From Hemiscyllium ocellatum (lineage: Eukaryota): DNA of 64,000 bases. A program made the translations under genes and the position numbers. Position 1 is the first letter of the stretch. Each line of letters opens with the position of its first letter. Location of the stretch: contig NC_083433.1 in assembly GCF_020745735.1 (NCBI RefSeq), positions 12,721,363 through 12,785,362 on the forward strand, given 5' to 3'. This document shows, piece by piece, positions 14,473-17,400 of this stretch. The notes under the pieces were generated by a model, which did no database searches, was not told the origin of the DNA, and worked only from the letters and a program-made list of their open reading frames with translations.

Positions 14473-17400
14473 CTAACTGCTGTCCTCCAGTGAGAGCCTG
14501 TCAAACAGGTACTCTCCCAGCCCATTCTCAGGAGCTCCCAGACGCTTCAGGTTGGTGATGTAGTCCCCAAGTCGCTTGATGATCTCAACCTCCTCATCCA
14601 AATAGTGGGTCTCCAGGAAGTCACACAGCTGGAACACAGGAATATTACAGCTCATTACATTAGCACAATCCAAGACAGTTTGGAGAATTCCCACTGCAAA
14701 ACAGATGGGGCAGTACTAGCTCTAGACAAACCTGAAACATCCAGCAAACAGCTAGAGCTTTTGTACTGGTGAATATATTATCCTCTCAGCTGGCACATCT
14801 TGCCATTTAAGTGGAGTGAGTTGTATTGTGGTGTATGGTGATCATTCCACTGCAATGGTCCTGAATAGGGATTCAGTGGATAATATCACTTCAGCACTCC
14901 CACCAGATTACAATCCAAGTTCCTCCTTGACCTTATTGCTGAGCAGTTGTAACATGCATCATTCCAGATCCACACTGGGTGGTTACAATGTTATATCTGG
15001 ACAAAGTTAAAAATCACAACACCAGGTTATAGTCCACCAAATTTATGTAGAAGCACTGCTCCTTCAGGTGGTTGTGGAGTATTAGTTTGGAAGCTAGAGC
15101 TTTGAAAAAGCCTGTTGGACTATAACCTGGTGTGGTGTTAGTTTTAACTTTGTCCACCCCAGTTTGACACTGGCATCTCCAAATCACATCCCCCCCAAAT
15201 GTTGCATTACTGAATTTCAAACCCACAAAGACCAACCAGTGAGGTGTTGCCCTGAGGGTGTGGCAGTGATGAGAATGAGAAGGTGGTGAAGCTTACATGA
15301 GGGTCAGTCTGGGCAGTGGCGAGTTGGTGTAGATCCAGCAAACTCTGGTTCACATTCTTCTCCAGATCCAGGGCAACCTGCATTGCCTGCAGACTGTTAC
15401 CCCACTCATCCCTCTCTGGCTTCTGAAACATGGAAACAAAGGACAGTTAAGGATCAGAATCAGAATCCCTACAGTGGGATGAAGCAGGTCATTTAGCCCA
15501 TTTGTCCACATCAACCCTCCAGAGGATCCCACTGACCCAACCCATCCCTGTAATCCTGTTTAAGGGAAAAAAATGTAACCTGTGTATCCCTGGAAACTGG
15601 GCAACCTAGCATGGCCAAACTGACCTGCACATCTTTGTGCCATGTGCAAACTGAGCAGTTCCCAAAGGCTGGAATTGGACCTGGGTCCCTGGCACAGACA
15701 CTGCAGTGCCAGTACCATCCTCAAGTCCAGAAGATGGTTTGAGGAGGAAGGGGTTTAGTGGGATCTCAGGAAACTTCAGAGAAAAATATGGAATGCACCA
15801 CCTGAGGAGAGTGGGGGAGGCTGCTAGTCCAGTGAAATTGCAGCAACATCTGGACAAATACTAGGGCACAGCAGGCTAATGACTAAGTGCAGGTAGATGG
15901 GATTAGTGTAGTTTGGTCAGCATAGATAATGGTAGACCAAAGGGCCTGTTTCTATGCAGTGACTGGGAGATGGAAGAGATCAGATGGGAAAGTCCAGCAA
16001 CAGCTCTTCACTTCCTCCCTACACCTTTCAGGATGAGCTAACCTTGTTACTGATGGAGTGAAGCCACATCACAAGAGTAGCCATCTCTCCACATCCCAAC
16101 ATTCCCACCTTCACATCCTGGAGGAGGACTCTGCCTCCACGCCGATTCTGGAATTTCAGCAGCTTCTCTGCATGTTCCTGCTTCTCCTGGGAGAGAGCTT
16201 TGAAGAACTGGGAGAAATGGTGCAGGGCAACATCATCCCGGTCAAAGTACGACATCTGAAAGAGAACCATTTACACATCACTGGGCCCCAATTCTAGTTG
16301 TCAGAAATAGAGACAAATTTAGCCCTCAGACTGGCTAGTCAAGCAGTTATTAATCCTCTGCATTCTCAACCAGGGTTTAATATCCCAGTGTTGCCCAGTG
16401 AGCCAACAGCTCTTAACCCTAGCTGCCTGTGGGGACATGCAACATCCATGTTTTAATTTGGATTAAACAGCTGGAGAGTTGCTCAGCAGGTCTGGTACAG
16501 ATCAGAGGAGAGAAACACTGAATTCATGTTTCTGCTCATTAACACCATTAGAATTGGAAGATAGACAATTATTGAAGAGTTTCAGTCAAGGAACTGAGTG
16601 AGCAGGATGTACTTGTGGTGGGATGGATTGGGTCCAGGGCTAGACAGCACTGGGTTAACATGAGGGATGGACATCAATGGACCCAAGAGGCAGCTTTTTC
16701 CAGAAGGTGGTGTATGAATGAGCTGCCAAAGGAATTAGTGGAGGCTGGTACAGTTACCCCATTTCAAAGGCATCTGGATGGGTATATGAATGGGAGGTAT
16801 TTAGAGTGATGTGTTCCAAATGGGACTAGATTAATGCAGGATATCTGGCTGGCATGGAAGTGTGGCTTAGAGGGTCTGTTTCTGTGCAGACCAGGTCTAG
16901 GATGGTAGATGCCAAATATTCTGCATGAAACCAACTGAAGTTGTAACCTGTAACAAGGGGAGGGTTCAGTTGGATGACAAGGAAAACCACTGGAGTACTA
17001 AGTGCAGTCTACTCCAGTCAACATTAACTAGAGGGTAATACCCAGTCACCAGGGTCATGGAGATACAAAACTGATATCAGAACACAGGGACAGGAGGCCA
17101 TTCAGCCCCTCAAGCTTGTTCTGTCATTCAATGAGAAAGTAACCATGAGGCTGCTGCAAGGCACTACATTTTTCCAGTTCAGCCCCAAAGGAACAATGGA
17201 TTTTGGACATGGCCAGAGAGAGATTTGTGTAGCTGATACATCATTGGGATTGTCTTGTACTGATCAAATGTATGGTACAATGTGTTCATATCAGAGTATG
17301 GAAGGGAATGAGTGGGAAGGGGATCCAGGGTTTGCTGAGGAAAGCCTGTACAAGGAGCCTTTTAGTTGTAAGCAAGCAACTGAGTGATTAGAAAAGTGTA

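What the first reader, a model, noticed from the sequence alone, without database searches (positions are those of the whole stretch)
16109..16255. Ferroxidase centre carries light-chain substitutions in every copy (E62K, Q141E) while keeping E27 and H65
Seen in sequence: all seven exon-2 copies read QEKQEH (H/M chains read EEREH; the AAG codon is at 16181-16183 in copy 2). Exon 4 reads LDEE(V/I) versus H-chain LNEQV, and ends [12 protein letters not shown]. Established: in human H numbering E27, Y34, E62, H65, E107 and Q141 form the ferroxidase centre. Mammalian L chain has K62 (salt bridge to E107), E141, and Leu rather than His at 173 in the 4-fold pore. Here K62, E107, E141 and L173 are L-like, E27, Y34 and H65 are H/M-like, and the 3-fold pore D131/E134 is intact. 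Only two of the four L-chain nucleation glutamates remain ([11 protein letters not shown] vs FFRELAEEKRE). Inference: this is either an ancient L-lineage intermediate or a convergent ferroxidase-dead subunit that is also a weak nucleator.
Basis: partly seen in the sequence, partly recalled or inferred. Interest (0 to 1): 0.78.

Follow-up and report, generated by a model that had tools for sequence, protein, structure and literature searches.

The report
Shark ferritin subunit with lysine-blocked active site
This exon belongs to a tandem array of shark-specific iron-storage (ferritin) genes whose iron-oxidising site lost its central glutamate to a lysine long ago, as also happened in the light chain of land vertebrates and in mammalian FTHL17, and the shark change was most likely independent.

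Summary
The stretch 16109-16255 (minus strand) is exon 2 of a four-exon, 176-residue ferritin gene. All seven exon-2 copies in the window read QEKQEH, and all eight exon-4 copies read LDEE(V/I) and [12 protein letters not shown]. Four copies are intact; four are broken or truncated.

K62 is not special to this genome. It defines a lineage ("K") found in four shark orders, whose branching follows the species tree. E141 and R172 occur only in carpet sharks, and L173 is shared with ferroxidase-intact shark ferritins.

The K lineage is most similar to frog M and H ferritins and to a cartilaginous-fish H/M-type family ("S2"). Similarity to L chains is lowest.

In the full tree, K+L and K+S2 tie (49.5% against 47.7% of bootstraps). 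With 12 active-site and nucleation columns masked, K+S2 gets 85.7% and K+L 1.3%, although K+L is not formally rejected (AU p 0.27).

I read this as a convergent, probably ferroxidase-dead subunit. The closest precedent is mammalian FTHL17 (E62K with the other site residues kept), reported to have no ferroxidase activity.

Large shark ferritin arrays are already published. This scan reached the same reading twice on adjacent DNA (s1-147295, s1-175278).

The parts
16109..16255 (-). Exon 2 of gene B (the finding). It encodes residues 35-83, including QEKQEH. The K62 codon AAG (own numbering K59) is at 16181-16183.
14473..19611 (-). Gene B, intact, 176 aa. Exons: 19611-19510, 16255-16109, 15422-15297 and 14628-14473. 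AATAAA lies about 131 nt after the stop codon.
37581..42443 (-). Gene E, intact, 176 aa. Exons: 42443-42342, 39358-39212, 38533-38408 and 37736-37581.
46312..51216 (-). Gene F, intact, 176 aa. Exons: 51216-51115, 48087-47941, 47261-47136 and 46467-46312.
55105..59846 (-). Gene G, intact, 176 aa. Exons: 59846-59745, 56869-56723, 56050-55925 and 55260-55105.
93..3010 (-). Gene A, broken. Exon 1 has a 2-nt deletion and has lost its GT donor. Exons 2-4 are still open: 1426-1280, 944-819 and 248-93.
23747..28705 (-). Gene C, pseudogene. Exon 4 has an in-frame stop (L*DF), and exon 2 (25609-25463) carries S-to-L and R-to-W changes.
32580..34342 (-). Gene D, truncated at the 5' end. Exons 2-4 are intact, but its repeat unit lacks about 3.5 kb that holds the promoter and exon 1.
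63744..63899 (-). Exon 4 of gene H; the rest of the gene lies beyond the window. A 2-nt deletion just after the acceptor shifts the frame.
10744..10845 (-). Orphan exon 1 with its own promoter, 82% identical to the gene G promoter and exon 1. No exons 2-4 follow it before gene A.

Best explanation
The window holds part of a tandem array (units of about 8.75 kb) of a shark-specific ferritin lineage, here called K.

Origin. K most likely branched from the cartilaginous-fish H/M-type, IRE-less ferritin family, here called S2. It fixed E62K before the living shark orders diverged. Carpet sharks later added Q141E and K172R.

Mechanism (inferred). E62 is the carboxylate that bridges the two irons of the ferroxidase centre. 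A lysine there should remove di-iron binding and probably pairs with E107, as it does in L chains. The subunit would then fold and assemble normally but would not oxidise Fe(II) quickly.

Role (inferred). K most likely co-assembles with catalytically active S2 or H subunits into 24-mers and tunes the active-to-inactive ratio, as L does in tetrapods. Each gene has its own TATA promoter and no IRE. The resemblance to tetrapod L and to mammalian FTHL17 is convergent.
For: Shown here:
- Gene models and residues.
- K62 is present in Orectolobiformes, Carcharhiniformes (Mustelus), Lamniformes and Hexanchiformes. Q141 and K172 are kept outside carpet sharks.
- K is monophyletic (100% bootstrap) with the squalomorph Heptranchias sister to the galeomorph members (98/84).
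- Mean identity of K is 73% to S2, 70% to M, 69% to H and 64% to L. The best solved relatives are frog M (283 bits), then H; no L chain is in the top 60.
- With 12 functional columns masked, K+S2 gets 85.7% of bootstraps and K+L 1.3%.
- K and S2, and H and S2, share a chromosome-scale contig in several species; in Chiloscyllium plagiosum all three do.
- With turtle FTL as query, no lungfish, coelacanth, ray-finned, ray or chimaera protein with K62 appeared among the 120 listed hits.
- pN/pS among intact copies is 0.06-0.47.
- Two small, probably RNA, contig sets hold 76% and 48% of the exon 4 plus 3'UTR words, but only 7% and 6% of the words of the whole gene with its introns.
- No IRE was found.
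- A K-S2 dimer model scores 0.70 against a best control of 0.00. That mark was reached by 51 of 78 solved complexes and 2 of 108 mismatched pairs. The three runs agree in at least 98% of contacts and the partner's pLDDT is at least 91. This may be recall of known ferritin dimers.

From papers:
- The E62K+H65G mutant of human H ferritin loses ferroxidase activity (PMC6929972).
- FTHL17 has E62K with the other site residues conserved and no ferroxidase activity; the review calls E62K alone sufficient (PMC7760355).
Against: - No biochemistry exists for this protein. Loss of activity is inferred from homologues.
- E27, Y34, H65 and E107 have been kept across the shark orders that carry K62, which could mean the site still does something.
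- On the full alignment K+L is the best tree (50/37 support). Even after masking it is not rejected (lnL difference 5.7, AU p 0.27).
- K falls outside all sampled S2 sequences, including the chimaera one. That implies either losses in rays and chimaeras or a long-branch artefact.
- Expression rests on word shares in runs whose RNA label is only a guess.
- The dimer model cannot tell heteropolymer from homopolymer.
Confidence: 0.68

Rival explanations
1. K is the true shark orthologue of tetrapod FTL. On this view the L lineage dates to the jawed-vertebrate ancestor, and the shark protein preserves an early stage: K62 first, then E141, with E27 and H65 not yet lost.
For: - K+L is the best tree on the full alignment and appears in 49.5% of bootstraps. 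It is not rejected after masking (AU p 0.27).
- With turtle FTL as query, K proteins are the best non-tetrapod hits.
- Some amphibian FTLs still keep E27 and axolotl FTL keeps H65, so K62 and E141 also came first in the real L lineage.
Against: - Support for K+L falls to 1.3% once 12 functional columns are masked.
- Only K62 and a V/I at position 8 are shared derived states; E141 and R172 are confined to carpet sharks.
- K has its lowest identity to L.
- K shares a chromosome with S2, and in Chiloscyllium plagiosum with H too.
- Orthology would need losses in rays, chimaeras, ray-finned fishes, coelacanth and lungfish, none of which showed a K62 protein among the listed hits.
- There is no IRE, whereas FTL mRNAs carry one (established knowledge).
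Confidence: 0.1
2. K is an FTHL17-like ferritin with a non-storage role. It would form mostly homopolymers in germ cells or oocytes and hold or deliver Fe(II), instead of building a mineral core with active partners.
For: - The site pattern matches FTHL17: K62 with E27, Y34, H65, E107 and, outside carpet sharks, Q141 kept. Marsupial FTHL17 (P0086) shows this pattern (PMC7760355).
- Mouse Fthl17 is also multi-copy (six genes on X; PMC7760355).
- The largest Greenland shark ferritin cluster is reported as ovary-specific (bioRxiv 10.1101/2024.09.09.611499).
Against: - No tissue or localisation data exist for K.
- K is not related to FTHL17: P0086 groups with tetrapod M ferritins.
- K keeps E61 and the four-exon structure.
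- The modelled dimer interface with S2 looks normal.
Confidence: 0.14
3. K62 is tolerated, and the subunit still oxidises iron at a modified site built from E27, H65, E107 and, in carpet sharks, E141.
For: E27, Y34, H65 and E107 are conserved across the shark orders that carry K62. Purifying selection acts on the copies.
Against: E62 bridges both irons. The E62K+H65G human H mutant and the natural E62K protein FTHL17 are both reported inactive (PMC6929972, PMC7760355). Heptranchias and one Cetorhinus K protein have also lost H65 (to R).
Confidence: 0.07

Closest known systems
Mammalian FTHL17 (ferritin heavy polypeptide-like 17)
   Same: It has E62K while the other ferroxidase residues are conserved. 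It is reported to lack ferroxidase activity, with E62K stated to be sufficient for the loss (PMC7760355, summarising Ruzzenenti 2015). It is multi-copy in mouse. Marsupial FTHL17 (P0086) reads DEKLEH with E27, H65 and Q141.
   Different: It is not related by descent: P0086 groups with tetrapod M ferritins. FTHL17 also has E61D and is X-linked. The shark genes keep E61 and four exons, and sit in long autosomal-type arrays. Tissue and localisation are unknown for the shark protein.
Tetrapod ferritin light chain (FTL)
   Same: Both have K62. Carpet-shark K proteins also share E141, R172/L173 and the C-terminal [10 protein letters not shown](S/T)L motif. In both lineages K62 came before the loss of other site residues. 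The likely role as a catalytically inactive partner in heteropolymers is the same.
   Different: - K keeps E27 and H65.
- K lacks the nucleation glutamates at positions 57 and 60.
- K has no IRE.
- K is only about 64% identical to L, against 73% to the shark S2 family.
- The tree support for K+L vanishes when functional sites are masked.
Cartilaginous-fish amplified H/M-type ferritin family (S2: P0184, P0210, P0202 and others)
   Same: S2 is the nearest relative of K by identity and by the masked tree (85.7%). Both lie on the same chromosome, form tandem arrays and use the same four-exon plan. L173 and the GLGEYLFD(K/R)L motif are common in S2.
   Different: Nearly all S2 members keep the full ferroxidase centre (EEREH, Q141). 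K carries the diagnostic states L33, K62, Q98, V102, D105 and Q119. One Heptranchias S2 paralogue (P0194) acquired K62 independently.
Bullfrog M ferritin (1MFR, 4MJY)
   Same: It is the best solved relative (E 7e-84, full length, no gaps). It has the same length of 176 residues and the same 3-fold channel residues.
   Different: M ferritin has an intact, fast ferroxidase centre (E62, Q141) and H173.

Membership tests
Eukaryotic 24-mer ferritin (Pfam PF00210) | Full-length sequence match to ferritin | tested here: met
   phmmer against solved structures gives frog M ferritin at E 7e-84 over residues 1-176. PF00210 is recorded on all close relatives.
Eukaryotic 24-mer ferritin (Pfam PF00210) | Vertebrate four-exon plan (102+147+126+156 nt of coding sequence, phase 0) with GT-AG introns | tested here: met
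   Genes B, E, F and G.
Eukaryotic 24-mer ferritin (Pfam PF00210) | 3-fold channel carboxylates D131 and E134 | tested here: met
   LCDFLETHY is present in every intact copy.
Catalytically active H/M-type subunit | Complete ferroxidase centre: E27, Y34, E62, H65, E107 and Q141 | tested here: not met
   Position 62 is K in every copy and in all K-lineage species. Position 141 is E in carpet sharks.
Tetrapod FTL (orthology) | K62 and E141 | tested here: met
   Both are present here. E141 is absent from the K proteins of Mustelus, lamniforms and Heptranchias.
Tetrapod FTL (orthology) | Loss of E27 and H65 | tested here: not met
   Both are kept. Some amphibian FTLs also keep one of them, so this feature is typical of FTL but not universal.
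Tetrapod FTL (orthology) | Nucleation glutamates at positions 57, 60, 61 and 64 | tested here: not met
   These positions read A57, Q60, E61 and E64.
Tetrapod FTL (orthology) | Groups with FTL in a phylogeny | tested here: inconclusive
   K+L gets 49.5% of bootstraps on the full alignment and 1.3% after masking 12 functional columns. AU p for K+L is 0.27.
Tetrapod FTL (orthology) | Conserved neighbourhood with the FTL locus, on a different chromosome from FTH1 | tested here: inconclusive
The genes that flank the K array could not be read.
Tetrapod FTL (orthology) | IRE in the 5' leader | tested here: not met
   No Rfam match anywhere in the window. No CAGWGN loop in any leader.
FTHL17 | E62K with the remaining ferroxidase residues conserved | tested here: met
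   Marsupial FTHL17 (P0086) shows the same pattern.
FTHL17 | Descent from the mammalian FTHL17 gene | tested here: not met
   P0086 groups with tetrapod M ferritins and not with K.
FTHL17 | No ferroxidase activity, low stability and partly nuclear localisation | not testable with these tools
   This needs recombinant protein and cell work.
Cartilaginous-fish S2 ferritin family | Sister to or within S2 in a phylogeny | tested here: inconclusive
   K+S2 gets 85.7% of bootstraps after masking and 47.7% before. On the full alignment the constrained K+S2 tree has a slightly higher likelihood than the free search.

The most novel reading that the evidence does not exclude
The shark K lineage and tetrapod FTL descend from one ancestral K62 gene of early jawed vertebrates. 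The carpet-shark protein (K62 and E141 with E27 and H65 still present) would then be a living intermediate of light-chain evolution, and FTL would have been lost in rays, chimaeras, ray-finned fishes, coelacanth and lungfish.
Probability: 0.1. Interest if true: 0.75.

Novelty: new member of a known kind. Interest (0 to 1): 0.45.

Why it matters
Ferritin cages mix iron-oxidising and non-oxidising subunits. Among vertebrates, the textbook non-oxidising subunit is the tetrapod L chain.

An old, amplified shark lineage that made the same first move (E62K), with carpet sharks adding the same second move (Q141E), would be a third independent vertebrate case beside FTL and FTHL17. That points to a preferred mutational route for switching off the ferroxidase centre while keeping the cage.

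The lineage also offers natural proteins that separate the effect of K62 alone (Mustelus, lamniforms) from K62 plus E141 (carpet sharks).

Finally, it cautions against the 'FTL' label given to shark copies in genome papers. I did not check whether those copies are K-lineage genes.

Tried and rejected
Splice joints, transcript ends and tissue levels could therefore not be read.
- Synteny by the look-up of encoding contigs gave little:
  - The white shark K gene has nothing else within 10 kb, and no DNA was returned.
  - The Chiloscyllium plagiosum H gene has only another ferritin nearby.
  - P0168 and P0265 are not on record.
  - The elephant-shark S2 pair lies next to an MMP-like gene, which is uninformative.
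- The search of earlier findings would not look beyond the window, and it has no notes on the genes that flank FTL or FTH1.
- The AU test of K nested among shark-only S2 gave p 0.043. It is not a clean test, because ray S2 sequences nest inside shark S2 in the free tree.
- The pseudogene-array reading is rejected: there are four intact copies, pN/pS is below 0.5, and the lineage is conserved across four shark orders.
- I did not predict a monomer structure, because the tool returns no coordinates with which to measure a K62-E107 contact.
- Paper searches found no residue-level description of shark ferritin.
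Full report
WHAT IS THERE

The window (64 kb, 45% G+C, no N) is filled by head-to-tail ferritin genes on the minus strand. The stretch 16109-16255 is a 147-nt exon with an AG acceptor and a GT donor. It translates to 49 residues that include QEKQEH.

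A six-frame motif scan finds seven exon-2 copies with QEKQEH. It finds eight exon-4 copies with LDEE(V/I) and [12 protein letters not shown], seven exon-3 copies and seven exon-1 copies.

Assembling the exons gives four intact genes of 176 residues, B, E, F and G, all with GT-AG introns. The other four copies are damaged:
- Gene A has a 2-nt deletion in exon 1 and has lost its donor.
- Gene C has an in-frame stop in exon 4 and two radical changes in exon 2.
- Gene H has a 2-nt deletion at the start of exon 4.
- Gene D lacks the 3.5 kb that holds the promoter and exon 1.

An orphan exon 1 with its own promoter sits at 10744-10845. The repeat unit is about 8.75 kb and is 88-94% identical between copies, introns included.

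RESIDUES

phmmer against solved structures aligns the lysine under E62 of EEREH. In human H numbering (own residue number plus 3), the intact copies carry E27, Y34, E61, K62, E64, H65, E107, D131, E134, E141, R172 and L173.

WHOSE GENE IS IT

A search of 1.84 billion cluster representatives with exon 2 led to a zebra shark relative. From there I reached named proteins of the epaulette shark (Hemiscyllium ocellatum), the bamboo sharks (Chiloscyllium), the zebra shark (Stegostoma) and the whale shark. All are annotated 'ferritin, middle/heavy subunit-like'.

The same lineage, which I call K, is present in Mustelus (Carcharhiniformes), in Cetorhinus and Carcharodon (Lamniformes) and in Heptranchias (Hexanchiformes). 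All have K62. Outside carpet sharks they keep Q141 and K172. Heptranchias and one Cetorhinus protein have additionally lost H65 (to R).

K62 is therefore old and E141 is a later addition in carpet sharks. L173 is also common in a second, ferroxidase-intact cartilaginous-fish family (S2: EEREH, Q141), so it is not a marker of the L lineage. No ray, skate or chimaera protein with the K signature appeared among the listed hits.

IS IT AN L CHAIN?

I collected turtle, crocodile, squamate, amphibian and mammalian FTLs. I then built maximum-likelihood trees of 104 ferritins over 176 columns with a site-heterogeneous model. K, L and S2 are each monophyletic with at least 99% ultrafast bootstrap. The placement of K depends on which columns are used.

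Full alignment:
- K+L appears in 49.5% of bootstrap trees and K+S2 in 47.7%.
- A tree constrained to K+S2 is slightly better than the free search result.

With the 12 ferroxidase and nucleation columns masked:
- K+S2 rises to 85.7% and K+L falls to 1.3%.
- The AU test still does not reject K+L (lnL difference 5.7, p 0.27).

Other observations point the same way:
- The only derived states that the whole K lineage shares with L are K62 and a V/I at position 8. L70, E141, L165 and R172 are L-like only in carpet sharks.
- Mean identity of K is 73% to S2, 70% to M, 69% to H and 64% to L.
- The best solved relatives are frog M and then H ferritins; no L chain is in the top 60.
- Inside K, the squalomorph Heptranchias is sister to the galeomorph members, as in the species tree. 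That indicates vertical descent from an early shark.
- Clusters of K and S2, and of H and S2, report identical chromosome-scale contig lengths in several species. All three coincide in Chiloscyllium plagiosum.
- Earlier scan notes place S2-type arrays and a further ferritin gene 6.0-6.4 Mb upstream on this same piece.

This favours local duplication over an ancient whole-genome paralogue, but it is an inference, not a mapped result.

E62K IS RECURRENT

Several independent cases turned up:
- A Heptranchias S2 paralogue (P0194) nests inside S2 and has K62.
- A Lingula ferritin (P0002) has K62.
- A sponge ferritin has E62K together with other changes (PMC8395497).
- P0086, found through exon 2, is marsupial FTHL17. 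It reads DEKLEH with E27, H65 and Q141 and groups with tetrapod M ferritins.

Within true FTLs, some frogs keep E27 and axolotl keeps H65. K62 and E141 therefore came first in that lineage too. The shark lineage repeats the order of steps without needing common descent.

HOW IT MOST LIKELY WORKS

From established ferritin chemistry, E62 bridges the two irons of the ferroxidase centre. The human H double mutant E62K+H65G loses ferroxidase activity (PMC6929972). FTHL17, with E62K and the other site residues conserved, has no ferroxidase activity, and the review states that E62K alone is sufficient (PMC7760355, summarising Ruzzenenti 2015).

By analogy, K subunits should be catalytically dead or nearly so. 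With only E61 and E64 of the L-type nucleation set, they should be no better than H chains at nucleation. These are inferences; no assay exists.

The genes look functional:
- pN/pS among intact copies is 0.06-0.47.
- Each copy has a TATA box about 100 nt upstream of the ATG and a conserved upstream motif.
- There is no IRE by Rfam or by loop motif.
- A polyadenylation signal lies about 131 nt after the stop codon.

Two small contig sets from the same species, probably RNA, hold 76% and 48% of the exon 4 plus 3'UTR words. They hold only 7% and 6% of the words of the whole gene with its introns. That fits spliced transcripts of this copy or a near-identical one, but it is indirect.

A modelled K-S2 pair adopts the symmetric ferritin two-fold interface:
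- The score is 0.70 and the best control is 0.00.
- That mark was reached by 51 of 78 solved complexes and 2 of 108 mismatched pairs.
- The three runs agree in at least 98% of contacts, and the partner's pLDDT is at least 91.

This is compatible with mixed cages, but it may simply be recall of known ferritin dimers. My preferred reading is an L-like inactive partner for the active S2 or H subunits. An FTHL17-like role apart from storage is the main functional rival.

WHAT IS KNOWN ALREADY

A Greenland shark genome preprint reports 155 'FTL' and 179 'FTH1' copies in three clusters shared with the white shark. It dates them to at least 250 million years and reports ovary-specific expression of the largest cluster, without residue analysis (bioRxiv 10.1101/2024.09.09.611499). 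My results suggest the 'FTL' label need not mean orthology with tetrapod FTL, although I did not check which of those copies are K-lineage genes.

This scan had already reached the same overall reading on adjacent DNA (s1-147295, s1-175278).

This report adds the following:
- the species distribution of K62 as against E141;
- the masking experiment and the AU tests;
- the FTHL17 parallel;
- the amphibian FTL intermediates;
- the state of each copy in this window.

LIMITS

- The genes flanking the array could not be read.
- The hit lists are capped at 120, so absence from rays and bony fishes is provisional.
- All functional statements await biochemistry.

Noticed in passing
window 19612-19770, 42444-42600, 51217-51375, 59847-60005 and the other exon-1 upstream regions (minus strand): Every exon-1 copy has a TATA box (GTATAAATAAAAG) about 100 nt upstream of the ATG. 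About 30 nt further upstream lies a conserved TGATGTCATTTCCTG motif that resembles a CRE/ATF site. No IRE loop is present in any leader.
   Followed up: partly
window 10744-11103 (minus strand): There is an orphan promoter plus intact exon 1 with a GT donor, 82% identical to that of gene G. It lies 7.8 kb upstream of the broken exon 1 of gene A, with no exons 2-4 of its own.
   Followed up: partly
window 34700-35710: The repeat unit of gene D lacks about 3.5 kb (unit positions 1801-5281) that holds the promoter, exon 1 and part of intron 1. This gives a 5-kb spacing to gene E in place of the usual 8.75 kb.
   Followed up: partly
exon 1 of genes B, E, F and G (codon for own residue 26, H position 29): The residue after LEL, which is Y29 in H chains, differs between the intact copies: T in B and F, A in E, M in G. 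It is T in most K-lineage species and Y in Heptranchias.
   Followed up: no
P0194, P0211, P0243 (Heptranchias perlo S2 paralogues): Within the ferroxidase-intact S2 family, one Heptranchias copy has independently acquired K62, and two others have N62 with W63.
   Followed up: partly
P0346, P0352, P0365 (frog FTLs) and P0350 (axolotl FTL): Some amphibian light chains still carry E27, and the axolotl one still carries H65. The tetrapod L lineage therefore also fixed K62 and E141 before losing the other site residues.
   Followed up: partly
P0321 (labelled Ailuropoda), P0326 (labelled Acrobeloides nanus), P0310 (Alligator sinensis): Two public proteins filed under giant panda and under a nematode look like squamate light chains and are probably contamination. 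The alligator model joins an H/M-type exon 1 to L-type exons 2-4.
   Followed up: no
L001 (Callorhinchus milii, MU249835.1, about 16.08-16.10 Mb): The elephant-shark S2-type ferritin is one of two tandem ferritin genes (175 and 173 aa). A gene of the matrix-metalloproteinase type lies next to them on the opposite strand.
   Followed up: no
P0155, P0156, P0161, P0177, P0343 (oyster, Lingula, sponge, Hydra, coral): Several invertebrate ferritin models of about 262 aa contain the exon 2-3 block twice. These may be duplicated or mutually exclusive exons, or annotation errors.
   Followed up: no
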